Numbered from the stretch's first letter, positions 1 to 58,994 are shown. The stretch is DNA of 64,000 nt from Mobula birostris (GCF_030028105.1 NC_092374.1:193993345-194057344), one strand, 5' to 3'. Made by a program: numbers and translations. The notes: generated by a model not told the origin, from the sequence alone.

Positions 1-790
1 GGACTAGGAAGATGGAACTCGGAACCAGAGTCTGGACAAGGACCCAGAACCTGGGTCTTGGTTGGGACTCAGAACCTGGGTCTTGACTCGGAACAGGAAC
101 CCGGCTTTGGGCAAGGACTCGGTACTAGGATCTTGGCAAGGACAGGACGAGGCTACAGGACAGGACGAGGTACTACAGCACAGGACGAGGTACTCAAGGA
201 CTGGACATGGATCTCCTGCAGAGGACGAGGAATCTCCAGCACAGGACGAGGACACGAAGCTCAGATTTGGACGGGGCTGGAACACGGAACCTGGACTTGG
301 TCTTGGAACACAGAAACAGAGCCTTGGAATTGGACTGGACACTCAGAGCCTTGCACGTGGACTGGACGAGGTACTCCAGGGCAGGACGAGGCTCCGGGAC
401 GCGGGGCCGGGACCCTTTCTCGGGACGCGGCGCCGGGGCGACTGACAAGGTCAACTGCCGAGGTAAACTGTCCAGGTGAACTGCCGAGGATTCGGATGGG
501 GACGATCCAGCACAGGACGAGGAATCTCCAGCACCGGGCTGTGCGAGGTAATCCTGGGCTGGGCGAGAAACATGGACAGTGAGAGGCACCAGAACTCGAT
601 GAGGACAGGAAGCTCAGACGTTGACAGGGCTGGAACACGGGCGCCTGGACTTGGTCTTGGAACACAGGAACACAGAGCCTTGCACTTGATCACAAGGACA
701 CAAAACACAGAGTCAGGACCCCTCCTCGAGGACAGGATGTAGGGCCAGGGCTCGTACGCAGAACACGGACTCTAAACACGGGAACACAAA
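1..790. repeat. Imperfect tandem array built on CAGGACGAGG / GGACTTGG motifs
   Basis: Many copies of caggacgagg, plus a higher-order duplication (about 210-347 vs 565-712). The ORFs called here are repeat-derived. Confidence 0.85.
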
Positions 791-4168: not shown

Positions 4169-4211
4169 ATGGAGGTGGGCGCCATTCTGTGGCTCCTGAC
4201 CGTCTCTTCCG
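4169..4211 (+). CDS. Exon 1: signal peptide [14 protein letters not shown](G)
   Basis: Strong Kozak aacgATGG, hydrophobic core, and a phase-1 donor G|GTAAGT typical of IgSF leader exons. Confidence 0.88.
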
Positions 4212-43200: not shown

Positions 43201-46200
43201 TGGAGTATTTTCAAAAGATGTCAACAGCTTTGAGCACCATACCTCAGAAAGGATATGATGTCATTGGAGATATTCCAGAGGAGATTCACAAGGATGATTC
43301 CAGGGATGAAGGAGTTAATATATGAGGAGAGTTTGGCAGCTTTGGGCCTGTACTCACTGGAATTTAAAAGCATGCTGGGGTGGGAGGACCTTATTGAAAT
43401 CTACCAAATGTTGGAAAGACCAAATAGGGTTTAAGTGGAGAGCATGTTTCCTTGGGTGGGTGTATCCAGAACTAGAGAGCACAGCCTCAGAATTGAGGGG
43501 TGACCCTTTAGAACAGTGTAATGAATTTTTTTTAGGCACAGAGTAGTGAATCTGTGGAATTCTCTGCCACAGACTGCAGTAGAGGCCAAGTCCATGGGTA
43601 TATTTAAGGCAGAAGTTGATCGTTTCCTGATTGCTCAGGGCATCAAAGGATATGGTGAGAAGGCAGTGTGTGGGGTTGAGTGGGATCTAGGATCAGCCAG
43701 GATGGAATGGCAGAGCAGACTCGATGGGCTGAATGGCCTAATTCTGCTTCTATGTCTATTGTCTTATATTCCTATGTCTTATGGTCTTATGATCTGTGAC
43801 ATGGCTTAATTTTCCTTCTTTAGGAGATCCAGCCAGAAGACGAATTGATCTACACACCAATGCAAAGGTGAGTATGGATCCAGCCACCGCTAGATTAGTT
43901 GGTTTGCTACAAATGGAGCATTACCCAGGGTCCAGTGTTACACTGCTGTCTGCGTGCTCTATTCAGCAGGGAAGCAGTGAGATGTATCGCCATCCCAAAA
44001 TGACCCTCTGCTGTGGAGAGTTCATTATCAGGTAATGGTGCAGTTTGTTGTCCATCCAGTGAGCAGACTGGACCCGCAGGATGAAGCAGTGAAGCCTGGT
44101 GCACTGACATCATGCTAGGAGTAGTTGGTATTCAAGTTGATGCATTGTGTAGTGAGATTATGTAGATGATAGAGCAAAATTGTAGTCAGTGGGATGGGTT
44201 GAAGTTTAACATAGGGTCAAAGTCAAAATGGGTGATGAATACAGGACTATTTCAATAGGTTCAATGGGTACATTTAACAGAGAAATGTATACAATATACA
44301 TCCTGAAATTCTTTTTCTTCGCAAACATCCACGAAAACAGAGGAGTGCCCCAAAGAATGAAAGAATGAATGACAGTTAAACATTAGACCCCAAAGCCCCC
44401 CCCCACGCACAAGCAGCAGCAAGGCAGCGATTCCCCCCTCCCCCAGCAGTAAAAAAGCATTGGCGCACTCCACCAAGCAGTCAAACATACAGCAAATTAT
44501 CAATAAAGACAACGACTTGCAGTACTCCAAAGACTACTCATTTACCCGGTAATTCTCATGCAACAGGCTCTCTCTTGCCCTAATAAGGGGAAAAAAGGTG
44601 TCCCTGTTTCACAATGAGAGAGGAGACATAACAAACAACTCACTGATAATAGGGTTTTAAAAGTCTGTTGTGTCATTTTTTACCAAGCTAAGAAGCTAGG
44701 ATGTGAGATACAGATTTCAACAAGAAATAGAAAAGACATTTAACAAGGGCAATGTTATGATAGTCGTGGTGGAATTCCATTTGCAGGTGGATTGGGAAAA
44801 TCAGATTGGTGCTGGATCCCGAGAGGGAATTCGTAGGATGCCTGCAAGATGATATTTTAGATCAGCTTGTGGTGGAACCCAGTGGGGGACAGGCGATTCT
44901 GGATTGGGTGTTGTGCACCAAATTTGATAACGGACCTTAAAGCAAAGAAGCTTTGGAAGGCAGTGACTTTAATATGATAAAATTCACCCTGCATTTTGAG
45001 AGGGAGAGTAAGTATTACAGTGGATTAAAGGGAGTTACCGAGGCATGAGCGTACAGCTGGTCAAAGCTGATTGGAAGGAGTCACTATCAGCGATGATAGC
45101 AGGGTAGCAACGGCTGGAGCTTCTGGGGGCAATGTGGGAAGATCAAGATAGATACATCCTAAAGATGAAGAAGTATGCTAAAGGGAAGACAAGTCAGCCG
45201 GGGCTGACAAAGAAAGCATAAAAGCAAAAGAGAGGGCATATAATATAGCAAAACTTTGGGAAGCTTTTAAAAACCAACAGGAGACAGCTAAAAATTCATA
45301 AGGAGAGAAAAGATGAAAGATGAAGGTAAGCTAGTTCATTCTTCTGGGAAGGAGGGAGGCAGAAGGAGGAACTTATAGGCTAGTTAGCTTGACTTCAGTG
45401 TTGTGAAGATATTGGAGTACATTATTAATAATGAGGTTTCAGGGTACTTGATAAAGTAGGCTAAATTCAGAATTGATTCCTTAAGGAGAAATATTGCCTG
45501 ACAAATTTGATGGAATTCTTTAAGGAAATAACAAAGCAGAGTCGGTGGATGTTGCTTACTTGGATTTTCAAAAGGCCTTTGACAGGGTGCTGCACGTGAG
45601 GGCCATTAACAAGATAAGACCCCACGGTATTACAGGAAAAATACTAGCATGGATAGAAAGTTGCCAGGAGGGTTGGAAGGTTGGAATAAAGGGGACCAAT
45701 TCTAGTTGACTGTTGGTGACTAGTGGTTTTCCTCAGGGGTCGGCATTAGGACCACTTCTTTTCACATTATATGTTAACAATTTGGTATAGAGTTGTTGCC
45801 AAGTTTGCAGATGATACAATGATAGATAGAGAGAGAAGTAGTGTTGCAGAAGCAGGGGCTCTGACAGAATGGGTAAAGTGGCAGGTAGAAAATAGTGTAA
45901 AGAAGTGTGTGGTCATGAACTTTGCTAGAAGGAATAAAGGCATAGACTGTTTTCTAAATGGGGATAAAATACAAAATTTGGAGGTGCAACTTGTGCAGGA
46001 TTTCCAAAGGTGGACTTACAGATTGAGTCAGTGGTACGGAAGGCAAATGTACTGTTAGCGTTCATTTCAAGAGAATTAGAATATAAAAGCAAGGTTGTGA
46101 TGCTGAGGCTTTATAAGACTGCACTTGGAGTATTGTGCCCTATATCTAAGAAAAGATGTTTTGGCACTGGATAGATTCCAGAGGAGTTTCAAGAGAATGA

Positions 46201-48129
46201 TCCAGAATGACAAGCTTATGGTATGAGGAGCATTTGATGGTTCTGGGCCAGTATTCCCTGGAACTTAGAACAATGAAGGGGAATCTCATTGAAACCTATA
46301 GAATTATGAGAGATATCGATAGGATGATTGCAATCAGGCTTTGTTCCATTGAGGTTGGGTGGGATTACAACCATTTGTCATGGCTTAAGGGTGAAAGGTG
46401 AGAAGTTTAAGGTAAGAAGTTTAACTTCTTCATTCAGAGGGTCATGAGAGTGTGGAATGAGCTGCCAGTGCAATTGCTCCACACGAGATCGATTTCAAAG
46501 TTAAGAGAAGTAGGAATCTGGAGGGCTATAGTCCTGGTGCAGGTTGTTGGGAGTAGGCAGCTTAAGTGGTTTTGGGCATGGACTAGATGGCCGAAGGGTT
46601 ATTTTCTGTGCTATACTTCTCTATAGCTCTATGAATATTGAAAGGCCTAGGCAGAGAGGATTGCTCCTATAGTGGTGGAATCTAGGACCAAAGAGCACAG
46701 CCTCACAATAGAGGGACGTATATTTAGAACAGAGATGAGTAGAAATTTGTTCAGCCAGAGGATGATGAATCTGTGGAATTTATTGCCATGGACGGTTGCA
46801 GAGGACAATTCATTAGGTATATTTAAAGCATGGGTTGATAGTTTCTTGGTTAGTCAGGCCGTCAAACACCTGAACCATGGCTGCTGCACAAAGATTACAC
46901 TGGGCCTGTGTACATATCTGACTCCAGGTCCCTCTCTTCGCCCTGATACATTACCCCATTGTCCTTTGAAAATTTGGCTACTCCTGTCTGGGGCATCTCC
47001 TGCCCCAGTACTGGTCACAGTGACACAGGTTTATGAAGCAGCACATGAGCAGGACAATTCCCCCAACCACCCCAACTTGCACTTTATCAATGAGTGACCT
47101 CCTTCCCCCTCTTTCTCCTCACGGCCTGAAGACATTCAGTAACTCAATGGACAATGACATGGGTAAGTAAGTCCTCTTGAGCGTGGCTGATGCAAAAATG
47201 GGTGCAACCTCCGAACTCCCTGACACCCCAGTCACTCCTCACCTCAGCAGGCCATCTGTCCCATCGGTCCTAATTGTCAGCATTACCAACAGCCTGTCCT
47301 GGTCCGTCCACATTGATGCTACAGCCAGGAAAGTTCACCAACACCTCTAGTTCCTAAGGCAGTATCACGGCTTGGTAGGGCAACTGCTGTGCCCATGACC
47401 ACATCGAATTGCACAGCTCAGCACAGCATGGAAACTGGCCTCACCTCCATGCACTCTGTATTTCTCGCTGACTTGGCAAAGCAGCCAGCATAATAAAGAT
47501 CCTATCCACCCTGGTCATTGTTGCTCGATCCCCATCCCATTAGGCAGTAGATACAAAAGTCTGAAAGCACGTACCACCAGGATTCAGGACAGCTTCTACC
47601 CCACTGTTATCAGAGTATTGAATCGTTTGCTTGTACGATCAGATGGAGTCTTGACCTCACAATCCACCTCCTCATGTCCTTGCACCACACTTTCTCTGTA
47701 ACACTACATTCAGCATTCTGTTAGTGCTTTTCCCTTGTACTATCTCGATGCACTGACGTAATGGTATGGTCTGTATGATGTCTGTACTTCAGTGCAATAA
47801 TAAACAACTCACCAATGTAAGCAGACCAGGGTTTAGAATTGTCTTCGGACGAGAGGGCACCTTCAACCAGTGAAATCCACCATTTATTCCCAATGCAGAA
47901 ACCAATCTCTGCACAGGAGTAACCCACAAGGAGACAACAAAAGGAATTAGGAACAAGAATTGTGTCCTGTGGCACTGTTCACTCCTCCTCGCCTGCGCTC
48001 TCCATGTTCCTGCCCGTTGCTTTCACCTGTGGCAAAGGTTCACTGACATTCTCGTATTCACTCTCACAGATGTGATCACCCAGTGTCGACCAGACAACTC
48101 GCCGGTCTCCGATGAAGAGGTAAGTACAT

Positions 48130-48211
<82 letters not shown>

Positions 48212-51200
48212 TATACTAGATATATATAGTTATGTAGTTCATATCCTTGACAAATAGGAGACCACTCAGCCTGTTGATGTCTGTCTGCCCCAATTCTTCC
48301 ACTTGATCCCCTGCAACCTGTTCTCCCCACATTCCCACTGGGCTGCTCCTTGTTGGATATTTGTCTAGTGCAGGGGTCCCCAACCCTTTTCGCACTGCGG
48401 ACCGGTTTCATATTGACAATATTCTCGCGGACCGGCCGACCCGGGGGTCGGGTGGTGGTGGTGGTAGGGTTGCCAACGATCAAGAGTAGCTGTCAAATAC
48501 ATTGGGTATACCCTGAAAGGACTACAATGACCATGAAGACTTGCGCGGGCACCAGTGCGCATGTGTGATTTGCGTGCCGATTTTTTTTAAACTACAAATC
48601 GTTTTTGGTGGTTCTGTTCGGAGGGGGAGGTGTTATAGGTGATAAGTGGCTAATACACTCAATTTCGTTTCTAAAAGGGTTTATCTAACGAATTTCATAT
48701 TAAACACACAGCGCATATTTTCCTCGCATGAATATAGCGATAAGTCAATTATCAGGGGAGCTTGAAGTAAGTGTTGAACGAACTTCCAGTAGAAGTGGTA
48801 GAGGCAGGTTCGGTTTTATCATTTAAAGAAAAATTGGATAGGTATATAGATAGGAAAGGAATGGAGAGTTATGGGCTGCAGGTCGGTGGAACTAGGTGAG
48901 AGTAGCATTCGGCACAGACTAGAAGGGCAGAGATCGCGCGCACACACACACACAAATAAATATGCTGAACACCAGCTTTTCATTATATAGCTCCACCCTT
49001 CTATCACCATAGTGACTCACGAGCTGCTCGGTGCCTCTCTCTCTCTGAATCAGCGGCACACTCTCTCTCTTTTTAAAGGCACACTCCATAATGAATAATC
49101 CTTAGGGATTTTGTCACACCTCCCTCCTTTTGGGAAAAATTTTGAGCAAGGAGCAAATTTTTGTCCAACTGTAGACTGTAAAGCTTGAAGCAATACATGT
49201 GTAATTATCAGCTAATATAGCAAAAGCGTATACAAATTTTAACTTAACACCTGCATAAACAATCGGCTATAGTGTTGTCAGTACCCTTTATGTTTTATTT
49301 CCATGTCATATTCTTGCAAGATCAGACTCCAGTTTAGTAACCTTCTATTCTTATCCTTCATCTTACTCAGAAACACTAATGGATTATGGTCAGTGTAAAT
49401 CACAAGTGGTTTCTGCGCAGGACATACATAGACATCAAAATATTGCAAGGCTGAAATGAGTGATAGCAACTCCTTCTCAACAGTGGAATAATTCTTCTGG
49501 TGCTCATTAAATTTCTTTGAGAAATAAGCTACAGGATGTTCAATGTCATCATCACCCTTTTGTAAGAATACTGCCCCAGCAGATTCGTCACTAGCATGTA
49601 CAGCTCCCGAAAATGGTTGAGTAAAATTAGGTGCTTTAAGCACAGGTTGATAACACAGGATAGTTTTTAGTCGTTCAAAGGCCTCCTGGTAGAGCTCACT
49701 TCATACAGATCTTTCACTCTTCCCTAGTAGTTTCGTTAGAGGGAGAGTGATATCCGTGAAGATTTTATAAAACTTACGGTAGTACCCAACGATTCCTAAA
49801 AACCTTCTTAAAGTTTTCTTGCCCGTCGGAACGGGAACCTCAGCAATAGCTTGTACCTTGGTCTGCACAGGAGCCAGTTGGCCCCGGCCTACTACATAGC
49901 CAAGGTGAGTAACAGTGGCATGGCCAAGTTCAATTTTAGAGAGTTTAACAGTAAGATTGGCCTGGAAAGCTAGTCAAACAGCTTCTCTACTGCGGAGATA
50001 TGCTTCTCCCACGTATCATTCCATACAACCAAATCGTCAATATAATCCTCTGTATTTTATAAACCTCGAATCATAGAATTAATCATTCTTTGGAATATCC
50101 CTGCAGCATTTTTCATTCCAAAGGGTAAAACATTATACTCATACAATCCAGATGGTGTGACAAATGCAGAGATTTCTCTAGCCCTTTCTGTCAAGGGAAC
50201 ACACCAGTACCCTTTTAACAGGTCAATCATTGTAAGGTATTTAGCCTTTCCCACCTTATTAATACAGTCACCCACTCTCGGAATAGGATAAGTATCTGTC
50301 TTGGTCGCTGCATGAACTTTCCTGTAATCAGTACAGAATCTCATGCTGATGTCCAGTTTTGGCACAATTACACAGGGCAATGCCCAGTCTGAGCTAGATG
50401 GCCTAATCATGCCGTTTGTCAGCATGTACCCAATTTCTTGTTCAGCCATTTTACACTTTTCTAAATTCATTGTATAGGGATGTTGCTTAATTGGGTCAAC
50501 GTGACCTAAAATTACATCATGCACTGCAGCTGTGCATTGTTTTGGAATATCAGGGAACAAATCCTCATATTTGCTAATTAATCCCTTCAATTGATTTTGC
50601 TATTCAGGCTCCAGATGATGGACTTTACTGTCAGTGTTTTCCAAATGGAATTCCAGTGGAATTCCTGAGCCTTGTTGGGACTATACTTAGCTTGTTAAAA
50701 TTATCTGGTAACTCGTTACCAGTCTCCATGACTCCACTTGTTTTCATAATAGTACTCTCAGGTGCTGTCTCCGAGTTATAATAAGGCTTTATCATATTAA
50801 CGTGTACCACTTAAGTAGCCTTCCTTCAGTTGGGAGTCTTAACAACATAATTCAAAGAGTCAATTTTTTAAATTATCTGGTATGGTCCACTAAATTTTGC
50901 TTGGTGGGTTGATCAAAAGTTGGAACAGAACCAGAACATTATCTCCAACATGATACATCTGTTCTCTAGTTTTTCTGTCATACCAGACCTTCATCTTCCT
51001 CTGAGAGTTCTCCAAATCCTGCCTTGCAAGGACACAAACCTTGTTAAGTCTATCTCTGAATTCCAAAACATAACTGAACATGCTTACACATACCTCCTGA
51101 TTAGACCACTTCTCCCTGAGTAAAGTTAAAGGTCCTCTGGCCCTGTGACCGAAAACAAGTTCAAACGGGATAAACCGTAACGATTCTTGAATCGAGTCTT

Positions 51201-54200
51201 TGACAGCAGACAAAAGTAAATGCACACCTTCATCCCAGTCTTTTCCGTTTTCCACACAGTGTGTTTTAATCATTGTCTTAAGAGTGGAATGAAACCTTTC
51301 CAAGGCTCCTTAGGACTCTGGGTGATATGCAGATGATACGATCTGCTTAACTCCCAGTTCACCAACCATCCGCTGGAACAACCCTGAGGTGAAGTTACAG
51401 CCTTGGTCGGATTGAATCTGTTTGGGCAGACCAACCAGAGTAAAAAAAACTTGATGAGCACCCTCACCACAGTTTTACCTTTAGTATTTCGGAGAGGAGT
51501 CGCTTCGGGGAACCTAGATGCAGCACACATAATGCTTAACCCATACTGATGGCCAGCTGGAGTTTTTGGTAATGGGCCAACACAATCCACTATGACTTTG
51601 GAAAAAGGTTTACCAAAAGCAGGTATCGACTGAAGTGGGGCTACTGGGATGGGTCTCATTAGGTTTCCCCACAATTTGGCAAGTATGACAGGCCCTGCAA
51701 AAGGTAACAACATCTTTCTTTAAATTAGGCCAGTAAAATTCCTTCATAATCTTTCTCACAGTCTTATTCACTCCAAAATGTCCACCTTCGGCTTCTTATG
51801 GGCCATGTTTAAAATTTCAGCTTTGCAAACTTTCGGAACCACAACTTGATGCACAATGGTCCAATCCTCACTTGCAGGCACAGTGGATGGTCTCCACTTC
51901 CTGATTAACACCCTTTCCTTAAGGTAATATCCTATTGACTCCTTCTGAATCTCATCATCGGAGAGAGCTGCTTTTTTAAAGCCACAATTTCAGGATCTCG
52001 GTTTTGATCTGCTAGGAATTCTTTCCTAGACAAAGATAAACCTCGCTCATCAACCTTACTACCCAAGTCCTGTTGAAACAGGGTCGGTAGAAAAGTCTCT
52101 GATAAATCATCATGATCTGAACCCCTGTTTTGGCTATCATGGGCATTAGAATCCCCCTGCTCCGAACTATCTGCATCAGCAGATTTTTTAGACATGCTTC
52201 GGATTACTGCGCATGTGGGGTAAATATCCGTATCCATGTGTGGGTTGTTAGCTGCAGGTTTCCTCGTTAACTGCACTGCTGGATAAACATCCCCACCTGC
52301 AAGGTCATTACCGAGCTGCTGGATTGTCTATCAGTAATCCAGATCGTACCCCTATCTTGACGGGTCTTGATACCAAGTCGCATTTCAAAATTACCTTATG
52401 CAAAGGCACAGCCTCAGTCCCCTTTCCAATACCTTTGATAATATTCACTCCATCAGTTTTCATCTCGTCACCGAATTCCAAAACACTGTCTAATATTAGT
52501 GACTGAAAAGCCCCAGTATCTTGCCAGATTCTCACTGGAACCACAGTTGACCCCTCCTTTACAGACACAAACCAATTTGAGATAAACCGCTCAAATAACG
52601 CTTGAATTCGGTCAGACCCCTCCTTCCTTAGCAGTGTCTCAACTGACTGAACACAAGCATTTGGGATTGTCTCCTTTTCTTTTCCTTTTTCCCTTTTCAG
52701 AGTAAAACAACTAGATGCCACATGACTGGGCTTCTTACAAAAGTTACATGTAAAACTGGAAAATTTTCCTTTTGACTGCTTTCCTTCCTCTTTACATTTG
52801 TCAATAGTTCCCGACTTACTTTCTGGTTTAACCTGTGGGTTATCTCTGTTACTCTTTTGGTAGCGATTATTCGAGAAAAACGTAACCTTATGGGTTAAGG
52901 CAAACTCGTCTGCTAACCAAGCAGACACTGAAAGTGTCGCCAACTCTTTCTCAAATAAGTACGTCCTTAGTTCAGCAGGGACGCAGCTCTTAAACTCTTC
53001 AATCAATATCAACTCTCTTAAGTGATTAATATCCTCATTCGCCCCTTTGAGCTACACCAACGATTGAAGTACACCTGTTTTCCATGGGCAAACTCCACAT
53101 ACGTTTGGTTCCAAGACTTTTTCAAATCTCGAATCTTTTGTCTGTACACCTCCGGATCCAACCTCATAACCCTTAAGCACAGCATCTTTCACTGTGCTAT
53201 AATCATTTGCCTCTACAAGAGACTGGGCAGAATACGCTTGCTGAGCCTTCCCCTTAATCACACTTTGTAACAGCACAACCCACTGATCCCTTGGCTATTT
53301 CCGAATCAGGGCAACTTTTTCGAAGTGCAGGAAATACCTATCCACTTCGGTTTCATCAAATGGAGGTAGCAACTTAATTTCTTGGCTGGCATTAAACAGT
53401 ACAACCAGGTCATTACCACGGTCTGGCACTTGATATCTGCTGCCATTTCTCCCTCTCGAACTCTGTCTTTCTGCCTCTCTAGCCTCATACTGCCTCTGCC
53501 TTTCTTTATCCTCAGTCTCTAATTTAAGTCTATCTAATTTCATTTGTTCCAGTCGTAACTGGATCTCCTCTTTACCTACAGGAAATCCCTTTAACTCCTC
53601 CTCATCAAATTGCTTCGTAGAGATATAGCATTCAACTACTTTCCTTTGAATTTCTACCTTTGTCATACCCTTCTTTAGCTCCGTAAGTTTCAGCTCTTTA
53701 ACAATGTCCACAACTCATCCTTTCTAGCTTTCTTCAAAGCCACAGGGTCTGGCGATGCCAGAAAATCCCAAACATCCACTTCTGCTGTTTTCTACACGTG
53801 AGTCAATCAAAGGAAAAGTAGCCAATAAGATTGTTAATCACTCAATCAGTAAGCCCCCAATTTAGTTCATATCTCGGACGCAGGCCCCAATTTTGTTACG
53901 TAACCCGTAACGGGTTAAAAGAAACAGCAGAAATGGAACGCACCTGGAGTCTAGTTTTGCTGTTAACTAACTCTATTTTATTAGTAGCTATGTAATAAAG
54001 CAACATACAAACAGATAAATCTAACAGGTTAGCAGAGTTTATGCATATATAGGTGTGTAAATACAAAACCCAAACTTCTTCAAACTTAGGTGGTAATTGA
54101 TACAGTCTTATGAAGGTATGTAAACGAAGTTAGTTCAGTTCGTGACATTGAGTTGAGTAGAATTGAGGAGAGAGGTGATTTGTTATCCAAGTAAGCTGAT

Positions 54201-57200
54201 GCCGTCAATCTTTTCGTGGTCCTCCGAATACTTTAAGGTCACCAAATGTGACCACACTAAAGGCACCATCTTCATGTGGTGAAGCTATAAACCCAGGCAA
54301 GGGTTAAATACACTGATAGCTTTCCACCGGTCACTCCTTTTCTTGCACTGTGAGAGCCACTGGTCGATTCTCCCGATCGATCCACAAAACCCACCCGTTT
54401 TGGGGCACTCAAAGCTCATCTGGTGTCAGTTTCTTCTGTGTCTCTGTACGCCTACAAGAAAGCCAGCTGACCTTGTATATATATATATACAAACATGCTG
54501 AACACCAGCTGTCCATTATATAGCTCCACCCTTCTATCACCATGGCGACTCACGAGATGCTCGGTGCCTCTCTCTCTTAACCAGCGGCACACTCTGTCTC
54601 TTTTTAAAGGTACAGTCCGTAATGAATAATCCTTAAGATTTCGTTGCAGTGAACCATCTGTAAATAACTGACTGGAGACACAAGGGAAGGCAAATGCTAG
54701 AATCTGGAGTGTCAAACAATCTGCTGGAGGAGTCAATCGGGTCGAGCGGGCTCTGTGGCAGGGGGTGCTGGTGTGAAATATTTCCAGTCAAAACCCTAAA
54801 CCTTGCACCAGGGCTTGGAAGTGGAGATGGCCTGTACAAAGAGATGAGGGTGTGTTGGAGGTAACTGGTAGGGGCTGCTGGATAACAGGCAGATAATGCT
54901 CTGCAGATGACAGAGAGGGGTGGAATTTGGAGACAAGCGTGGATGGCAAACAGCTATGGGAAGGATGGGATATTTGGAAGTTTGGTTGACCAGCAAGCTT
55001 GGCAAGATTTTTCGAGCCGTTTCGGCTACAATCATGTGGGATATAATTTGTTGTCGTATCTCTTTTATCTGAATCTGACTCTTCGGGGAGCATCAAGGGA
55101 GACGTGGGCCTGGTCTAACTTAATCCTTCACTGTATTGCCGTGCCTACAGTGAAAAGCTTAGATTTCCATGCTGATTGTACTCAGATCATTCTAATCGAA
55201 TCCTTTTCTCCACAAGGTACCCACTGTAGAGAACATCCAGTATGCGGAGATATATCCAAGTTACTCCAAAAACCGAACTCCTGCCAAGACATCGGTGGAA
55301 GATGGCGATTTGGAGTGAGTTACTTAACTTATCTTAGCTTAGTTGTGGCTGGATACATAGGGTGACTGAGTATGGAGAATCACAGCACAGAAATAAGCCC
55401 TCCAGCCCAGCATAATCCTCGGACTATGTTGTTCGAGGACGCAAACAACTCATTTCACTGCACAGGGTTCGATGTGCGGGTGTCAGGTAAAGATCGTCTT
55501 TAACTCTGGCATTAAGTTATAGGTGGAAGAATTGGAGAGAAGATTGGGAACAACATTTTCACAAGAGTGGAGCGGGAGTCCAGAACTCCTTTGTGAAAGG
55601 GCAGCAGGCACAGAAATCTTCAGCACCTTAAACTGTGTGATGCGTGTGTGTCTGTCTGTATGAGTGTGTGTGTGTGTGTGTCTGTGTGATCTAACAGCCG
55701 CTCAAATGTACTTCTATATCAACTTGCACCATTCCAGGCCACTACCACGCTCTGTGTGTTTAAAAAAAAACCACTTACTGCACAATCTCCTCTGAACTTT
55801 CTCCCTCTCACCTTAAGTGCATTTCCTCTGGAAAGAGGAAGAAATTGCCTTTAAACTCATGAGAGAACATAGGCCATCAACTTTTTGCTGTTGATGTTTC
55901 TGTAGCAGGCAATTTCTTTTTTACTAGGTCGAGTTACTAGCTCGACTCTCAACCCAGCACGGGTGGAAAGCTGCCAGGGGAGCCGACTGGGTTTGAACTC
56001 GGGAACTTTCGCTCCGAAGTCCAGCGCTGATGCCACTGCGCCACCAGCCAGCTACATTTCCTCTAATATTTGACGTTTATTATAATTGTTCAATTTTAAT
56101 ATTAATGAAATAATCAAACAGTTAAGATAATGATAAAAATGCATTAATATATAACCAAAAAGAACACCAAATAGTCACTTTAGACATGGTTGAATTCTGT
56201 GAGTAAAAGTCACACTGGAGTTTATTGTCATATGCATGGATGCAATGAAACAGTTAATTGTAGAAGCATCACATAGCATCACATAAACAGAGTTACACAC
56301 AAAATGCTGGAGGAACTCAGCAGGTCAGGCAGCATCTATGGAGAGGAATAAACACTCTGTTTCTGGTTGAGACCCCATCATCATGACTGAAAAGGGGGTG
56401 GGGGGGGGGGAGAAGTAGAGAAGCCAGAATGAGAAGGGAATGGTGGTGGGGGTAAGGAATACAAGCTGGCAGGTGATAGGTGAGACCAGGTGAGAGGGAA
56501 GCTGGGTGGCATTTGTCTGTGTTGCGTTGGATGTCCAGCTTCTGCAGAATCTCCTGTGTTTATCGTACTGACATTACTCTCAAGCAAAGCATACATTATG
56601 TATATTTTTAAGGACTTTACTCGCCTCTTGAATGAGTTGAGTAGTTTTGCTCCCTTTCCTGCAGAACATTGGGTCAGAAACACAGTACTGGGGGAGAGAG
56701 CACTTCATGGGTACCTGTTACAAAATGCACCAAACGCCTGGCTCCAGTGCAGCCAGTGTCACTGTGCACCGGGTACAGCATGAAATGGTGGGATTAGTGA
56801 GATACTGCGGGGCGGTCCCACTACAAGAGGTAGATGCTGAATTTCGTAAAATAAAAATCTGATGCCAGTCGCCACAGAAACGTAAAATGCCACCAGCACA
56901 GATTCCAGGTCTCATTAACCCCACCCTCCCCACTTCCTTTGGCAGGCAGGACGACGGCTATGACGAGCTGAACGTGATAGGTGAGTATCAAAGGTAGCAA
57001 CGCGTGGTGGAGAGACTGGGGGTACATGAGAACTGGGGTAAAATAGTGAGGTTAAACTGGGGACTGAAGTAAAATAGCCCATGGGGTTAAAATGGGGACA
57101 AAGGTAAAATAATGGGGTTAAAATGGGGACTGGAGTAAAATACTGGGGTTAAAATATGGACTGGGTAAAAGTGGGGTTAAAATGTCAGTGGGGGCAAAAT

Positions 57201-58994
57201 AGTGGGATTAAAATGGGGACTGGGGTAAAATAGTGGGGTTCAAATGGGGATGGGGTAAAATAGTGGGGTTAAATTGGGGACTGAGGTAAAATAGTGTGGT
57301 TAAAATGGGGACTGGGGTAAAAGTCGGGGTTAAAATGGGGATTGGGGTAAGTCAGTGGGGCCTGAGGGGTTAAAATGGATATAGTCATTAAAGCGGAGAC
57401 TCATGTAAAATGTGAATGGGGGTTCAGGGGAACTGGGATAAAATCATGGGATTAAAATGGGGATTGGGGTAAAATAGTGGGGTTAAACTGGGAATGGGGT
57501 AAAATCAATGGAGTTTAAATAGGGACTGGTGTGAAATAGTGGGGTTAAATAGGAACGGGGTGAACTAGTCAGTAGGGTTAAAATAGTAACAGATTTAAAA
57601 TGGGGACTGGAATATAATGGGGATGGGGAAATATCAGTGTGATTAAAATGGGGATGGAGTGCTTAAAATGGATACAGTCATTCGAATGGGGATTGAGGGG
57701 TAAAATGAGAATAGAGGTTCTATGGGAACTGGTTAAAATAGGCAGAGGTGTTAAAATGGTGACAGGAATTGGCTAAATAGGGACTGACCGAATTAAACAA
57801 GAATGAGGATAAATGGGAACTGAGGAGATTAAACAGGAATGGGACTAATTTGGGACAGGGGGTTAAACAGGAATGAGGCTAAATGGGGACATCTGTCAGT
57901 AACATTTACTGATGCTTTAGATGCCTCATTTGCTTCTTTCTCTATTTCACAGCAAAACGTAGCCTCCAGCCTGAAGAAGCCACAAACCAGGTAAGAAACC
58001 AAGCATTTGCTGAGGTCAGGGCAAGTGGGGAGATCCTGGAGAGATTCGAAAATGTAGCTGAGAAATGTTAAATTGAGCTGTGTTTGGCCCTTAGCTTCAG
58101 AAATGAAATGAAGTGGTGATTGGGTTAGAATCTGTCAGAACATTTTTCATTTCCTGTCCCTGTGGCTGGATTATTTCCAATAAGTCCCTGAACTGGAGAT
58201 GTGAGAGGGGAGATTGAGTAGATGAGGGGTGTATTCCCTTGAGTCTAGATTAACTAGACATTCCAGACCATGAGTGTTCGCACAACTGTTTGAACTAAAA
58301 CTGCTCTCGACTGGGAGAGTGTACATCAGAGGCCACTTGACACAAGTGATTCAGAAGCTGCTCACCTTATTGATAAGGACAATGATTTGTGCCTCCCAGA
58401 CCCCAGCAATGTGCGGGTTGGGTCAGTAGGATAATCGGCCATTGTAAGTATTCAATTGCGTAGATGAGTGGCGGAGTCTGCTGGAGGAGGAGCTGACAGG
58501 CATGCAAAGAAGGTAAAATTGGTGAGGGTAGGATCAGTTTGATCACTGGCACGGACACGTTGGGCCAGAGAACATTTTCTCTGACCTAATGAGACAAGAG
58601 GGGCTTTTTTCACTCAGCGAATTATTGGAAACTGGGATTACATTCAGTCACAGCGAGCAGAAGAGAGCTGGAAGAGCATCTGAAGGTCGATGGGCTGAGA
58701 GTGGAGCAGTGGGATTACCTGGTTTTTGCAAGAGCCAGTACAGCCTAGATAGGCCAAATATCCTCCTCCTGTACCTTGCCACTACAGAGGAGTTGGTTCT
58801 TTACTCCCAATGGTCAGGCCATACCAGTTAACAGAATTAATTTGTCTCTTCTGTGTTTTCAGTAGGAAGATGGGACTGTGAACAAACAGGTCTTGAGGAA
58901 GATTGGGAAGATCGGAGAAGCAGGTCCTCAAACGTGCTCTCAGCAGTTGGGTCGTGAATATAACAAGGATTCCAGTTTCTGTTCCTTTAATTGA
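4169..58994 (+). CDS. NCR3-like: Multi-exon NKp30/NCR3-related VJ-IgSF type I receptor with long tyrosine-motif tail (about 461 aa; spliced gene span)
   Basis: Join(4169-4211, 5710-6048, 34260-34589, 35641-35754, 37479-37497, 37595-37632, 38734-38774, 40048-40077, 43824-43867, 47125-47162, 48070-48119, 55217-55314, 56946-56980, 57953-57990, 58866-58994) gives 1386 nt in one open frame. All junctions are GT-AG except a GG acceptor before 47125. Confidence 0.75.
5710..6048 (+). CDS. NCR3-like: V1 exon: germline-joined VJ-type IgV domain, NKp30-like
   Basis: Acceptor tttcag and donor G|GTAAGC, phase 1-1. Has B-strand Cys (IPC), C-strand Trp (YRWFK), DTGMYVC and a J-like [24 protein letters not shown] resembles NKp30 GKEVRNGTPEFRGRL. 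Confidence 0.9.
6675..10108 (+). mobile_element. CR1-type LINE, 5'-truncated (ORF1 esterase remnant + ORF2 APE-RT), with stops and frameshifts
   Basis: [10 protein letters not shown] esterase motif, YLNARSI...ETW endonuclease, [10 protein letters not shown] and KFADD RT motifs, and a ctgttctatgttctat tail. Absent from the duplicated block at about 20735. Confidence 0.93.
12429..12618. repeat. About 190-bp near-perfect palindrome (Penelope-terminus-derived hairpin)
   Basis: caacacacatcaaagttgctggtgaacgcagcaggccaggcagcatc is the reverse complement of the distal arm. Arms pair up to a loop of about 10 nt, and the ORF track shows mirrored ORFs. Confidence 0.9.
13112..13199. repeat. 23-bp perfect inverted repeat / mini-MITE
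   Basis: cacacccaatttgtgtacctgct (13112-13134) pairs with agcaggtacacaaattgggtgtg (13177-13199). Confidence 0.85.
13205..13406. mobile_element. Tc1/mariner MITE
   Basis: TIRs cgaggggtgattgataa..gtggcctaagg / ccttaggccacgaacttatcaatcacccctc, flanked by TA on both sides. Confidence 0.85.
14138..18030 (-). mobile_element. CR1-type LINE ORF2, degenerate, interrupted by a hAT element
   Basis: APE ([11 protein letters not shown]...ETW) and RT ([26 protein letters not shown]) fragments, with the 3' tail near 14138. Confidence 0.92.
16722..17784. mobile_element. Non-autonomous hAT (Charlie-like) element
   Basis: TIR-like tggttg..ccaacc / gttggcaaccacta and an 8-bp TSD CTCTACAC (16714-16721, 17785-17792). 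It splits the CR1 peptide LQGVE|CQWVEL. Confidence 0.8.
18224..18760 (+). mobile_element. Retroelement 3'-end/SINE-like insertion just upstream of the V2 acceptor
   Basis: Absent from the paralogous intron upstream of V1. Ends with tgacaataaa and a taatctaatctaa tail. Confidence 0.6.
18797..20124 (+). pseudogene. NCR3-like: V2 pseudo-exon: duplicate of V1 split by a LINE insertion
   Basis: [11 protein letters not shown]...DSGMY (18797-19071) [insertion] [21 protein letters not shown] (20061-20123). Acceptor aag and donor A|GTAAGG are retained, and 33 of 112 codons differ in amino acid from V1. Confidence 0.9.
19074..20057 (-). mobile_element. 5'-truncated Rex1/Babar-type LINE inserted in V2
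   Basis: [13 protein letters not shown] motif and [13 protein letters not shown]...[12 protein letters not shown]. Candidate TSD TACTT at 19069-19073 and 20058-20062. Confidence 0.88.
21600..25700 (-). mobile_element. Old fragmented CR1 LINE (ORF1 + ORF2 remnants)
   Basis: Remnants of RT ([16 protein letters not shown]), APE ([12 protein letters not shown]) and ORF1 esterase (DGLHLNWRG; [10 protein letters not shown]). Confidence 0.8.
26370..30790 (+). mobile_element. Rex1/Babar-type LINE interrupted by a CR1 at 26579-29937
   Basis: [20 protein letters not shown]...[11 protein letters not shown] before the insertion and [14 protein letters not shown] after it. Confidence 0.85.
26579..29937 (-). 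mobile_element. Young CR1 LINE, near-intact ORF2, 5'-truncated in ORF1
   Basis: ORFs 28831-29601 (APE), 28342-28830, 27959-28345 and 26667-27953 (RT, 428 aa) are separated by one in-frame stop and two frameshifts. Confidence 0.95.
30800..31370 (-). mobile_element. Old Rex1/Babar-type LINE 3' fragment
   Basis: [14 protein letters not shown]...[14 protein letters not shown] (ORF 31174-31530). Confidence 0.7.
33338..33790 (-). mobile_element. CR1 3' fragment
   Basis: Peptide remnants [17 protein letters not shown] and VNLWNILPQ, with a tcttat-type tail. Confidence 0.7.
34260..34589 (+). CDS. NCR3-like: V3 exon: second intact VJ-type IgV domain, NKp30-like
   Basis: Acceptor ccattgcag and donor C|GTGAGT, phase 1-1. 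(G)KSKSFTVTQ...MVC...[16 protein letters not shown]...[27 protein letters not shown] and CKVRIDGIG resemble NKp30 EVRNGT and CRVEVLGLG. Confidence 0.88.
34770..35165. repeat. Minisatellite, about 43-44 bp unit (gtgggtcacacactgtcctatccccctctgggacccagtggg)
   Basis: Several tandem copies that are most homogeneous at 34960-35160. Confidence 0.9.
35641..35754 (+). CDS. TM exon [38 protein letters not shown]
   Basis: Acceptor tcccccacag, a hydrophobic run of about 25 residues, then an RRK stop-transfer. The phase-1 donor A|GTAACG is only moderate, so the 3' end is less certain. Confidence 0.8.
37479..37497 (+). CDS. Cytoplasmic micro-exon C1 (N)SLLFQ, phase 1-2
   Basis: Long pyrimidine tract + cacag, and donor AAG|GTGAGT. 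Confidence 0.8.
37595..37632 (+). CDS. C2 (R)[12 protein letters not shown], phase 2-1
   Basis: Acceptor ctttttctcttcag and donor CGG|GTAAGT. Only the phase-2 reading is open. Confidence 0.8.
38734..38774 (+). CDS. C3 (A)[13 protein letters not shown], phase 1-0
   Basis: Acceptor ttttacag and donor ACG|GTAAGT. Confidence 0.8.
40048..40077 (+). CDS. C3b [10 protein letters not shown], symmetric phase 0-0
   Basis: Acceptor tcttatttcacaacag and donor CCG|GTAAGA. At 30 nt it can be skipped in frame. Confidence 0.65.
40300..40850 (+). mobile_element. Rex1/Babar-type LINE 3' end
   Basis: [14 protein letters not shown]...HPLH...[11 protein letters not shown], followed by a short-repeat tail. Confidence 0.75.
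41330..42105 (+). mobile_element. Penelope-like element, GIY-YIG endonuclease remnant
   Basis: Degenerate [21 protein letters not shown] motif and a gatgctgcctgacctgctgagtt terminus. Confidence 0.7.
42270..43795 (+). mobile_element. Degenerate CR1 RT/3' end
   Basis: [22 protein letters not shown]...[13 protein letters not shown], with a tcttatggtcttat tail. Confidence 0.85.
43824..43867 (+). CDS. C4 [14 protein letters not shown], phase 0-2, YxxM motif
   Basis: Acceptor ttttccttctttag and donor AAG|GTGAGT. Confidence 0.82.
44740..46860 (+). mobile_element. Highly degenerate CR1 ORF2
   Basis: Remnants of [12 protein letters not shown] and KFADD motifs among many stops. Confidence 0.75.
47125..47162 (+). 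CDS. C5 (S)[12 protein letters not shown], phase 2-1, non-canonical GG acceptor
   Basis: Branch-like gtgac + pyrimidine tract + cacGG, with a perfect donor TGG|GTAAGT. The 38-nt length and phases are the only ones linking C4 to C6 in frame. Confidence 0.65.
48070..48119 (+). CDS. C6 (D)[16 protein letters not shown], phase 1-0
   Basis: Acceptor tcactctcacag and donor GAG|GTAAGT. Confidence 0.8.
48134..48232. repeat. Compound microsatellite (TG)n(TA)n(CA)n
   Basis: Directly visible, beginning 14 nt after the C6 donor. Confidence 0.95.
48371..48780. mobile_element. hAT-type MITE, one end only
   Basis: Terminus CAGGGGTCCCCAACC preceded by gtctagtg. No matching right end was found. Confidence 0.6.
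48958..54648 (-). mobile_element. Gmr1-like Ty3/Gypsy LTR retrotransposon (gag-PR-IN-RT-RH), decayed
   Basis: 5' LTR 53894-54648 and a PBS-like TGGGGCCTGCGTCCGAGAT. Gag has [14 protein letters not shown] and the protease motif is DTGA. Integrase (GHFGVNKT; VDCVGPLP; ERFHSTLK) precedes RT (RFCTDYRK; IDLLKGYW) and RNase H (DASDE...YTDHNPL). PPT 49119-49130, then a truncated 3' LTR 48958-49118. Confidence 0.9.
55217..55314 (+). CDS. C7 [32 protein letters not shown], phase 0-2, ITIM
   Basis: Acceptor tccttttctccacaag and donor GGA|GTGAGT. IQYAEI fits the ITIM consensus. Confidence 0.8.
55912..56052 (-). mobile_element. tRNA-derived SINE (tRNA-Arg-like head)
   Basis: A-box TGGCGCAGTGG, anticodon-like GACTTCGGAG, B-box GAGTTCAAACC and an A-rich tail. 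No acceptor stem. Confidence 0.75.
56946..56980 (+). CDS. C8 (E)[11 protein letters not shown], phase 2-1, hemITAM-like
   Basis: Acceptor cacttcctttggcag and donor TAG|GTGAGT. Confidence 0.8.
57030..57890 (+). repeat. G-tract satellite, about 30-31 bp unit (tggggttaaaatggggactggggtaaaatag)
   Basis: Many degenerate tandem copies with strong G skew on the + strand. Confidence 0.9.
57953..57990 (+). CDS. C9 (A)[12 protein letters not shown], phase 1-0
   Basis: Acceptor tctttctctatttcacag and donor CAG|GTAAGA. Confidence 0.8.
58866..58994 (+). CDS. Probable terminal coding exon EDGTVNKQ...SFCSFN* (if the distal AG is used)
   Basis: Tandem acceptor ttttCAG-TAG, TGA at 58992-58994, and AATAAA at 59165. 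Confidence 0.5.
   Translation, partial: EDGTVNKQVLRKIGKIGEAGPQTCSQQLGREYNKDSSFCSFN

What the first reader, a model, noticed from the sequence alone, without database searches (positions are those of the whole stretch)
43824..56980. Three different tyrosine motifs in one tail: YxxM, ITIM and hemITAM-like
Seen: LIYTPM (C4), IQYAEI (C7) and QDDGYDEL (C8), each on its own exon. Known: YxxM binds PI3K p85 (CD28, ICOS, DAP10). I/V/L/SxYxxL/V/I recruits SHP-1/2 or SHIP. DEDGYxxL is the Syk-binding hemITAM of Dectin-1 and CLEC-2, which are C-type lectins rather than IgSF receptors. Inference: a dual activating/inhibitory receptor tunable by splicing.
Basis: partly seen in the sequence, partly recalled or inferred. 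Interest (0 to 1): 0.72.

Follow-up and report, generated by a model that had tools for sequence, protein, structure and literature searches.

The report
Manta NKp30-like receptor three-tyrosine tail
The three tyrosine motifs are real and lie on separate exons of a manta ray immune-receptor gene, and sharks and rays have kept them, but they look like an ordinary "switch-off" receptor tail rather than a splice-tunable on/off switch, and this copy has a damaged splice site that may cut the tail short.

Summary
Observation confirmed. LIYTPM, IQYAEI and QDDGYDEL sit at the stated coordinates on three separate exons. They are exons 9, 12 and 13 of a 15-exon, 419-residue NKp30-like receptor gene in Mobula birostris, with two V domains and an uncharged membrane helix.

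The same tail occurs in a tandem paralogue 27 kb downstream and in predicted proteins of Mobula hypostoma, Hypanus sabinus, Scyliorhinus canicula and Heterodontus francisci. Only these three tyrosines are invariant. The ITIM-to-distal-tyrosine spacing is fixed at 28-29 residues. A profile of the tail finds only five elasmobranch clusters among 1.84 billion proteins.

Interpretation partly supported.
- YxxM and ITIM fit their consensus.
- The "hemITAM" look (DDGY) is a Mobula-specific change from the ancestral D-Y/F-G/E-Y-D/E-E-L-N. Its position fits better as the second phosphatase docking site of an ITIM pair.
- Splice tuning has no support. No motif exon can be skipped in frame, all annotated horn shark isoforms of the two tail-bearing genes keep all three motifs, and no manta RNA covered the exons.

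This copy has GG instead of AG at the exon 10 acceptor. Skipping that exon would leave only the YxxM motif.

An earlier follow-up in this scan reported the same tail on the paralogue. This is a new member of a known kind, of modest interest.

The parts
4169..4211 (+). Exon 1: start codon and leader peptide ([14 protein letters not shown]), donor GTAAGT, ends in phase 1
   Evidence: tblastn of P0002 gives 100% over residues 1-15; boundaries
5710..6048 (+). Exon 2: outer V-set domain (V1) with J-like YGAGTILAV, phase 1-1
   Evidence: Pfam V-set E 1.8e-9; PDB hits to SIRP-alpha and NKp30, E about 1e-6 to 4e-6; 93% identical to P0002
18796..20129 (+). Broken extra V exon (V1') in intron 2: 18796-19074 and 20064-20129 are split by an insertion of about 990 bp. 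It is absent from the 419-aa model.
34260..34589 (+). Exon 3: membrane-proximal V-set domain (V2), phase 1-1
   Evidence: Pfam V-set E 7e-11; NKp30 chains are the best full-domain PDB hits, E about 5e-6; sequence
35641..35754 (+). Exon 4: transmembrane helix [25 protein letters not shown] with no charged residue, then RRKLCSVD. The donor GTAACG is shared with the paralogue (GTAAGG).
37479..37497 (+). Exon 5: 19-nt micro-exon (N)SLLFQ(R). It is needed to keep the frame between exons 4 and 6.
   Evidence: motif scan, flanked by cacag|...|gtgagt; reproduces P0002 residues VANSLLFQR
37595..37632 (+). Exon 6: (R)[12 protein letters not shown]
38734..38774 (+). Exon 7: [14 protein letters not shown]
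40048..40077 (+). Exon 8: [10 protein letters not shown]
43824..43867 (+). It carries the YxxM motif IYTPM. 44 nt, phase 0 to 2.
   Evidence: I-Y-x-P-M is invariant in 7 of 7 tails
47123..47124 (+). Acceptor dinucleotide of exon 10 reads GG; the paralogue has AG at the same aligned position
   Evidence: no differing base was listed for the source-sample DNA run X4 in this bin, which is not independent of the assembly
47125..47162 (+). This is a conserved segment; 38 nt, phase 2 to 1.
   Evidence: the relative's DNA contig carries 47157 A>G, which gives Gly as in P0002
48070..48119 (+). Skipping exon 10 would put a stop codon in this exon.
55217..55314 (+). It carries the ITIM IQYAEI. 98 nt, phase 0 to 2.
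   Evidence: only two copies in the genome, this gene and the paralogue
56946..56980 (+). It carries the distal acidic YDEL site, 29 residues after the ITIM tyrosine. 35 nt, phase 2 to 1.
57953..57990 (+). Exon 14: [13 protein letters not shown]
   Evidence: 100% identical to the P0002 C-terminus
58863..58865 (+). Start of exon 15: the acceptor ttttcag is followed directly by the TAG stop. It is a CAG|TAG tandem acceptor. The 3' UTR follows.
49281..53714 (-). LTR-retrotransposon remnant in intron 11 (RT, RNase H and gag-like and integrase-like open frames on the - strand). It is absent from the paralogue and is not part of the gene product.

Best explanation
The stretch is the 3' half of a 15-exon gene of the giant manta ray. 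The gene encodes a type I membrane receptor of the cartilaginous-fish NKp30 (NCR3)-like family. It has two V-type Ig domains, an uncharged transmembrane helix and a 152-residue cytoplasmic tail built from eleven coding mini-exons. The tail is a signalling module conserved across elasmobranchs. It has a membrane-proximal I-Y-x-P-M (YxxM), then a conserved [12 protein letters not shown] segment. An ITIM, (I/V)-x-Y-(A/T)-x-I, follows, and exactly 28-29 residues later comes an acidic D-(Y/F/D)-(G/E)-Y-(D/E)-E-L-N site. Inferred mechanism: after ligand binding and phosphorylation by Src-family kinases, the ITIM and the distal YxxL act together as a bivalent dock for the tandem SH2 domains of SHP-1/SHP-2. 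The receptor is therefore mainly inhibitory, like PD-1, BTLA, KIR or SIRP-alpha. The YxPM site adds a PI3K p85 or adaptor (or endocytic) output, as in CD300f and BTLA. Shown here: the gene model, the motifs, their exon layout and their conservation. Inferred: phosphorylation and every SH2 partner. In this particular copy the acceptor of exon 10 is GG. Unless that site or a cryptic AG 15 nt downstream is used, the mRNA shifts frame after the YxxM exon and loses the ITIM and the distal site.
For: Gene model: 15 exons, 1260-nt open frame, 419 aa, collinear with and about 92-100% identical per exon to M. hypostoma XP_062903900 (P0002). Fourteen of fifteen junctions are canonical. Both V exons are V-set with NKp30 among the best PDB matches. 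There is no charged residue in the TM helix. The tail module is present and intact in the tandem paralogue (416 aa, all AG/GT), and also in M. hypostoma, Hypanus sabinus, Scyliorhinus canicula and two Heterodontus francisci genes. Of 4-8 tail tyrosines per sequence only these three are invariant. Y2-Y3 spacing is 28-29 in all seven sequences, while Y1-Y2 is 38-43. Invariant columns cluster at the motifs, p = 5e-4. Literature: in PD-1 and BTLA the ITIM and ITSM tyrosines are 25 residues apart, with similar spacing in many receptors, and this is proposed to allow 1:1 bivalent binding of the SHP1/2 tandem SH2 (PMC8631942). CD300f is an ITIM receptor that also binds p85 (Alvarez-Errico 2007 and Tian 2014, as cited in PMC7247439 and PMC10768021).
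Against: No biochemical data exist and no transcript evidence for the manta gene was found. The two small runs guessed to be RNA had zero depth on exons 10 and 11. The distal site has D or Y, not I/V/L/S/T, at -2, so it is neither a canonical ITIM nor an ITSM. Its fit to an SHP C-SH2 domain rests on my memory of peptide-library work, not on a test. Between the two manta paralogues the tail shows dN/dS near 1 on very few changes, so there is no power. The GG acceptor may mean that this copy does not make the full tail at all. The key paper on shark NCR3 genes (Kinlein et al. 2021, PMC8273117) is not held, so I could not check whether this tail type is already described.
Confidence: 0.6

Rival explanations
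1. One reading: a dual activating/inhibitory receptor. The distal DDGYDEL is a hemITAM that recruits Syk, YxxM recruits PI3K and the ITIM recruits phosphatases, and alternative splicing of the one-motif exons sets the balance.
For: Each motif is on its own exon. The window gene and its M. hypostoma orthologue read Q-D-D-G-Y-D-E-L in an acid-rich context ([14 protein letters not shown]), close to the DEDGYxxL of CLEC-2 and Dectin-1 (definition in PMC3576117). Human NKp30 and NKp44 are known to change function through tail splice variants (PMC5371597 and PMC4682172, titles and abstracts).
Against: The acidic -2 residue is derived. The paralogue, stingray, catshark and horn shark have Y or F there. 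No motif exon is a multiple of 3 nt (44, 98, 35), so none is a clean cassette; only the blocks of exons 9-11 (132 nt) and exons 12-14 (171 nt) are in frame. All seven annotated H. francisci products from the two tail-bearing genes keep all three motifs. Known hemITAMs sit in N-terminal tails of type II lectins without an adjacent ITIM.
Confidence: 0.12
2. This copy is a decaying or neo-functionalised duplicate. The AG-to-GG change at the exon 10 acceptor makes the mRNA skip exon 10 or use the first downstream AG. The frame then shifts, giving a 344-347-residue protein that keeps only the YxxM motif, or a transcript removed by nonsense-mediated decay. The intact three-motif tail would be made only by the neighbouring paralogue.
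For: The window has GG at 47123-47124 and the paralogue has AG in an otherwise identical 45-nt polypyrimidine context. Skipping gives ...[21 protein letters not shown]-stop, and the AG at +7 gives a 344-aa product. No alternative base was listed in DNA contigs of the source sample at that bin. The extra V exon in intron 2 is also broken, by an insertion.
Against: Exons 11-14 downstream are fully open and differ from the M. hypostoma orthologue at only 4 residues, with all motifs intact, so any loss would be very recent. A cryptic AG 15 nt downstream would keep the frame and remove only LKTFS (414 aa). The base was checked only against reads of the sample the assembly came from. The state in the relative's contig could not be read, because the position is within 31 nt of a contig end.
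Confidence: 0.35
3. The distal Y-(D/E)-E-L site is mainly a Src-family kinase SH2 docking site of the pYEEI type. It holds the kinase on the tail so that the kinase phosphorylates the ITIM and YxxM. It is neither a phosphatase site nor a Syk site.
For: Horn shark sequences read YEEL and the others YDEL, with invariant E at +2 and L at +3 and acidic residues upstream. From my own knowledge, pY-E-E-I/L is the classic optimum for Src-family SH2 domains.
Against: The strictly fixed 28-29-residue distance to the ITIM is not required by this model, but is expected for bivalent tandem-SH2 binding (PMC8631942). The model was not tested.
Confidence: 0.12
4. IYxPM is chiefly a Yxx-hydrophobic sorting signal for AP-2-mediated endocytosis (as with YVKM of CTLA-4; own knowledge), not a PI3K site.
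For: The motif fits Yxx-hydrophobic as well as YxxM. It is the tyrosine nearest the membrane and is invariant.
Against: Invariance of Met and Pro specifically, rather than any bulky hydrophobic residue, points to a more specific reader. From memory, YxPM occurs in p85 sites of PDGFR-beta and IRS-1. The two roles are not exclusive.
Confidence: 0.2

Closest known systems
Cartilaginous-fish NKp30 (NCR3) family receptors (Flajnik 2012 and Kinlein 2021, known to me; the latter is cited in PMC10450919 but its text is not held)
   Same: Non-rearranging VJ-type V-set domains with NKp30 among the best structural-database matches. A multigene cluster on one chromosome.
   Different: Two V domains instead of one. 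An uncharged TM instead of the Arg-bearing TM of mammalian NKp30. A long eleven-exon tail with three conserved tyrosines, whereas human NKp30 has a short tail without such motifs. MHC linkage and B7H6-type ligand were not tested.
BTLA and PD-1 (ITIM plus ITSM checkpoint receptors)
   Same: A type I Ig-V receptor with an uncharged TM. An ITIM is followed at a fixed distance by a second tyrosine site, 25 residues in PD-1 and BTLA (PMC8631942) against 28-29 here. From my own knowledge, BTLA also has a more membrane-proximal extra tyrosine site for Grb2/PI3K.
   Different: The second site is acidic D-x-G-Y-D-E-L, not TxYxx(V/I). There is no detectable sequence homology of the tails; the profile search found only elasmobranch proteins.
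CD300f (IREM-1 / CLM-1)
   Same: A single receptor chain that combines ITIMs with YxxM sites binding PI3K p85 and has both inhibitory and positive outputs (Alvarez-Errico 2007 and Tian 2014, cited in PMC7247439 and PMC10768021).
   Different: A different Ig domain family, a different motif order and number, and no sequence similarity of the tails.
hemITAM receptors CLEC-2 and Dectin-1
   Same: A YxxL preceded by acidic residues and Gly.
   Different: Those are type II C-type lectin-like receptors with the motif in a short N-terminal tail and no ITIM. Here the acidic -2 residue is not conserved outside one Mobula lineage.
SIRP-alpha (the automatic NCBI name of the manta partial model P0001 is 'tyrosine-protein phosphatase non-receptor type substrate 1-like')
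   Same: A V-set N-terminal domain with weak similarity (E about 1e-6) and an ITIM-bearing tail that docks SHP phosphatases.
   Different: SIRP-alpha has V-C1-C1 domains and four ITIM-type tyrosines. The similarity covers only strands A-F of the V domain. It is not an orthologue.

Membership tests
ITIM-bearing inhibitory Ig-superfamily receptor | (I/V/L/S)-x-Y-x-x-(L/V/I) in the cytoplasmic tail | tested here: met
   IQYAEI at 55235-55252. The homologues have IQYAVI, IHYAVI, VQYATI, IQYATI and IQYTEI.
ITIM-bearing inhibitory Ig-superfamily receptor | Transmembrane helix without a charged residue, so no pairing with DAP12, FcR-gamma or CD3-zeta | tested here: met
   [25 protein letters not shown] contains no K, R, D or E.
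ITIM-bearing inhibitory Ig-superfamily receptor | Second tyrosine site about 25-30 residues downstream, for tandem-SH2 binding | tested here: met
   Y2-Y3 is 29 in the window and 28-29 in all 7 sequences. The spacing criterion is from PMC8631942.
ITIM-bearing inhibitory Ig-superfamily receptor | Phosphorylation-dependent recruitment of SHP-1, SHP-2 or SHIP | not testable with these tools
   Needs biochemistry.
YxxM PI3K-docking motif (CD28, ICOS, DAP10, CD300f type) | Y-x-x-M in a cytoplasmic tail | tested here: met
   IYTPM in the window; I-Y-(T/A/I)-P-M in 7 of 7 tails.
YxxM PI3K-docking motif (CD28, ICOS, DAP10, CD300f type) | Binding of p85 SH2 domains when phosphorylated | not testable with these tools
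   Needs a pull-down assay.
hemITAM | Single YxxL/I | tested here: met
   YDEL or YEEL is invariant.
hemITAM | Triacidic DED(G) stretch directly before the tyrosine (PMC3576117) | tested here: inconclusive
   The window and M. hypostoma have QDDG, two of three acidic residues. The paralogue, Hypanus, Scyliorhinus and one horn shark gene have DYG, and the other horn shark gene has DFE. The feature is therefore lineage-specific and not conserved.
hemITAM | Sits in the N-terminal cytoplasmic tail of a type II C-type lectin-like receptor as the sole signalling motif | tested here: not met
   Type I Ig receptor; the motif lies in the C-terminal tail 29 residues after an ITIM.
hemITAM | Syk recruitment by receptor dimers | not testable with these tools
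   Needs biochemistry.
NKp30 / NCR3 family | Non-rearranging VJ-type V-set domain with a J-like G-x-G-T-x-L-x-V strand | tested here: met
   V1 has [10 protein letters not shown]2 has a degenerate IGEGVWPTV (IGEGVRLTV in the paralogue and orthologue). NKp30 chains match through the G strand at E 3e-6 to 6e-6.
NKp30 / NCR3 family | Single V domain and an Arg in the TM helix for CD3-zeta/FcR-gamma coupling (mammalian NKp30) | tested here: not met
   Two V domains and an uncharged TM.
NKp30 / NCR3 family | MHC linkage and a B7H6-type ligand | not tested
   Chromosomal neighbours outside the window were not examined.

The most novel reading that the evidence does not exclude
The elasmobranch tri-tyrosine tail is an old, family-specific checkpoint module whose distal acidic YxxL can switch between phosphatase and Syk/Src-type kinase docking. 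The two tandem manta genes form a natural pair: one with the full YxxM-ITIM-YxxL tail, and one (this window) reduced by the GG acceptor to a YxxM-only, PI3K-type costimulatory tail. That would be a paired inhibitory/activating set created by a single splice-site change, not by a charged TM residue.
Probability: 0.1. Interest if true: 0.6.

Novelty: new member of a known kind. Interest (0 to 1): 0.35.

Why it matters
The finding shows that a complete ITIM-type inhibitory tail has been kept in NKp30-like receptors of both sharks and rays. The tail has a fixed-distance second tyrosine and an added YxxM site. The logic of mammalian checkpoint receptors such as PD-1, BTLA and CD300f therefore also exists on an NKp30-type binding domain in cartilaginous fish. 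It gives three precisely placed tyrosines and a natural splice-site variant to test. It also corrects public annotation, where these genes are unnamed or called SIRP-alpha-like or turtle-like. It does not reveal a new signalling principle.

Tried and rejected
(1) RNA support. The only runs guessed to be RNA for this species (X1, X2) gave zero depth over exons 10 and 11 and only repeat-derived contigs elsewhere, and X1 is probably DNA.

(2) State of the GG acceptor in the close relative (run X8). The position lies 17 nt from a contig end, and such differences are not listed, so this is unresolved.

(3) Fetching the orthologous loci of M. hypostoma and S. canicula to compare exon phases. No DNA was served because the files are too large, and one look-up timed out.

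(4) Word-based search with the tail found only M. hypostoma and Hypanus.

(5) The protein-atlas search of the tail gave scores of 0.78 or less and TM of 0.28 or less, which is noise, as expected for a disordered tail.

(6) dN/dS between the two manta paralogues is about 1 in the tail, on 8-44 differences, so it is uninformative.

(7) ITAM (two YxxL/I 6-12 residues apart), ITSM (TxYxxV/I) and Grb2 YxN were looked for by eye in the 152-residue tail and are absent.

(8) An exon 4 to exon 6 junction without a micro-exon was rejected. No donor/acceptor pair keeps the frame, and the 19-nt exon at 37479-37497 restores it and reproduces the orthologue's NSLLFQ.

Full report
**What is there**

The window is G000:C6:193993345-194057344. 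This 210-Mb contig has the same length as the one that carries an NCBI Mobula birostris protein, P0001. The region is rich in transposable elements.

Each lies in a short open stretch bounded by a polypyrimidine-AG acceptor and a GTGAGT donor.

**Gene model**

A search with the V-domain open frame returned P0001. Searching with P0001 returned full-length predicted proteins from other elasmobranchs. The 419-aa Mobula hypostoma protein P0002 (XP_062903900, 'uncharacterized') maps onto the window exon by exon at about 92-100% identity.

I then placed every boundary. This included a 19-nt micro-exon (37479-37497, NSLLFQ), without which exons 4 and 6 cannot be joined in frame. I also placed the terminal acceptor, which is followed directly by TAG. 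The window then gives a 15-exon, 1260-nt open frame of 419 codons. The parts are:
- a leader peptide;
- two V-set domains. Pfam V-set scores are E 2e-9 and 7e-11, and NKp30 chains are among the best PDB matches, aligned through the J-like strand at E about 4e-6;
- an uncharged transmembrane helix;
- a 152-residue tail encoded by the end of exon 4 and ten further mini-exons.

The finding's coordinates run from the first base of exon 9 to the last base of exon 13.

**Conservation**

A tandem paralogue about 27 kb downstream is 85-93% identical, introns included. It has the same 15 exons, all with AG/GT, and encodes 416 aa with LIYTPM, IQYAEI and QDYGYDEL. The ITIM exon peptide has only these two copies in the 4-Gb genome.

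The same tail is present in:
- M. hypostoma;
- Hypanus sabinus;
- Scyliorhinus canicula;
- two Heterodontus francisci genes.

I aligned seven tails from five species.
- The invariant residues around them are I-Y-x-P-M, Y-x-x-I and D-x-x-Y-x-E-L-N.
- Invariant columns are enriched at the motifs (Fisher p = 5e-4).
- The distance from the ITIM tyrosine to the distal tyrosine is 28-29 residues in all seven. The YxxM-to-ITIM distance is 38 in sharks and 43 in rays.

A profile HMM of the tail, run against 1.84 billion cluster representatives, found five proteins and nothing else at E <= 0.001. The motifs are therefore real, non-random and old. Their age is at least that of the shark-ray split, which I place in the late Palaeozoic from my own knowledge.

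**What the motifs most likely do**

IYxPM fits YxxM and IQYAEI fits the ITIM pattern. The transmembrane helix has no charged residue, so the receptor must signal through its own tail.

A hemITAM is a YxxL downstream of a triacidic sequence (PMC3576117). Here the site sits in the C-terminal tail of a type I Ig receptor, directly downstream of an ITIM. The acidic residue at -2 that creates 'DDGY' is found only in the window gene and its M. hypostoma orthologue. The paralogue, stingray, catshark and one horn shark gene have DYGY, and the other horn shark gene has DFEY.

What is conserved is Y-(D/E)-E-L-N and its fixed 28-29-residue distance from the ITIM. Xu et al. (PMC8631942) note that the ITIM and ITSM tyrosines of PD-1 and BTLA are 25 residues apart. 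They add that many receptors share similar spacing, and they propose that this allows 1:1 bivalent binding of the tandem SH2 domains of SHP1/SHP2.

My best reading is therefore an inhibitory receptor. Its ITIM and distal YxxL form one bivalent phosphatase dock, and the YxPM site adds an accessory PI3K, adaptor or endocytic function. CD300f is an established example of an ITIM receptor that also binds p85 (references in PMC7247439 and PMC10768021). All SH2 partners are inferred and none is shown.

**Splicing**

The motif exons are 44, 98 and 35 nt, with phases 0-2, 0-2 and 2-1. None can be skipped alone without shifting the frame. Only the blocks of exons 9-11 (132 nt) and exons 12-14 (171 nt) are in frame, and the second block removes the ITIM and the distal site together.

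Seven annotated H. francisci products come from the two genes that carry this tail. They differ only in the V domain, the transmembrane exon or repeated juxtamembrane exons, and each keeps all three motifs. A third H. francisci gene product (P0003, named 'turtle homolog B-like') has IDTPM and ends just after it, but that is a different gene.

The only manta runs guessed to be RNA gave no depth on exons 10 and 11. 'Tunable by splicing' therefore has no support so far, though it is not excluded.

**A defect in this copy**

The acceptor of exon 10 (47123-47124) is GG. The paralogue has AG within an otherwise identical 45-nt context. Exon 10 encodes a conserved segment, [10 protein letters not shown]. 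The possible outcomes are:
- Skipping exon 10 gives ...[21 protein letters not shown]-stop (347 aa).
- Using the first downstream AG (+7) also shifts the frame (344 aa).
- Using an AG at +15 keeps the frame and loses five residues (414 aa).

DNA contigs of the source sample list no alternative base there, but that sample is not independent of the assembly. The relative's contig could not be read at that base. However, the same contig carries 47157 A>G, which reproduces the Gly of P0002 and confirms orthology.

Exons 11-14 are still intact and differ from the orthologue at four residues, so any loss is recent. For this gene, then, 'three motifs in one tail' depends on how exon 10 is spliced. 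For the family, the statement holds.

**Comparison and novelty**

By its V domains the gene belongs with the cartilaginous-fish NKp30/NCR3-like receptors. It differs from mammalian NKp30 in having two V domains, an uncharged TM and a long signalling tail. By function it most resembles BTLA, PD-1 and CD300f.

The proteins exist in public databases only as unnamed or mis-named predictions. An earlier follow-up in this scan (s1-145157) reported the same three conserved tyrosine motifs on the paralogue. I could not read the main paper on shark NCR3 genes. I file the gene as a new member of a known kind, of modest interest. The most useful specific points are the fixed ITIM-to-YxxL spacing, the derived nature of the 'hemITAM' look and the GG acceptor.

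Noticed in passing
window 18796-19074 and 20064-20129: A third V exon (V1', about 75% identical to V1 at protein level) lies in intron 2. An insertion of about 990 bp splits it between ...SGMYF and CKLKTMEW.... A manta partial model (P0001) and other cluster members carry three V domains, so this copy seems to have lost its middle V exon.
   Followed up: partly
window 37479-37497: A 19-nt micro-exon (NSLLFQ) is needed to keep the frame between the TM exon and the next tail exon. It is conserved in the paralogue (L007/L006 region, C6:194100743-194100761). An annotator could easily miss it.
   Followed up: yes
window 58857-58868: A tandem CAG|TAG acceptor at the last exon. The proximal site makes TAG the stop codon, so the protein ends ...ATNQ as in M. 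hypostoma. The distal site would read on as EDGTVNK..., and the Hypanus protein ends ...NQEDGTVNQ.
   Followed up: partly
window 49281-53714, - strand: An LTR-retrotransposon remnant (RVT_1, RT_RNaseH, gag-like and integrase-like open frames in pieces) is inserted in intron 11. It is absent from the paralogue's intron. A similar gag-like open frame lies at 62825-63940 on the + strand.
   Followed up: partly
window 48134-48179: A (TG)n microsatellite begins only 15 nt after the exon 11 donor. Read contigs break there.
   Followed up: no
window 1-500: Degenerate 20-26-nt tandem repeats (units such as ACAGGACGAGGAACTCCAGC) lie about 3.7 kb upstream of the start codon. They give long open frames on both strands that are not genes.
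   Followed up: partly
P0005 (S. canicula), P0013 and P0012 (H. francisci): Several annotated relatives lack the transmembrane exon, with the V domain or even the leader joined directly to the tail exons. These are either annotation errors or soluble or odd isoforms. The juxtamembrane Q-R-Q-E-x-(D/N)-I-P-x-x-T unit is repeated 2-4 times in horn shark.
   Followed up: no
window versus paralogue, V1 exon 5710-6048: V1 differs at 24 of 112 residues between the two manta paralogues (dN/dS 1.2), whereas V2 differs at 9 of 110 (dN/dS 0.27). The outer domain is diverging faster, as expected for a ligand-binding face.
   Followed up: partly
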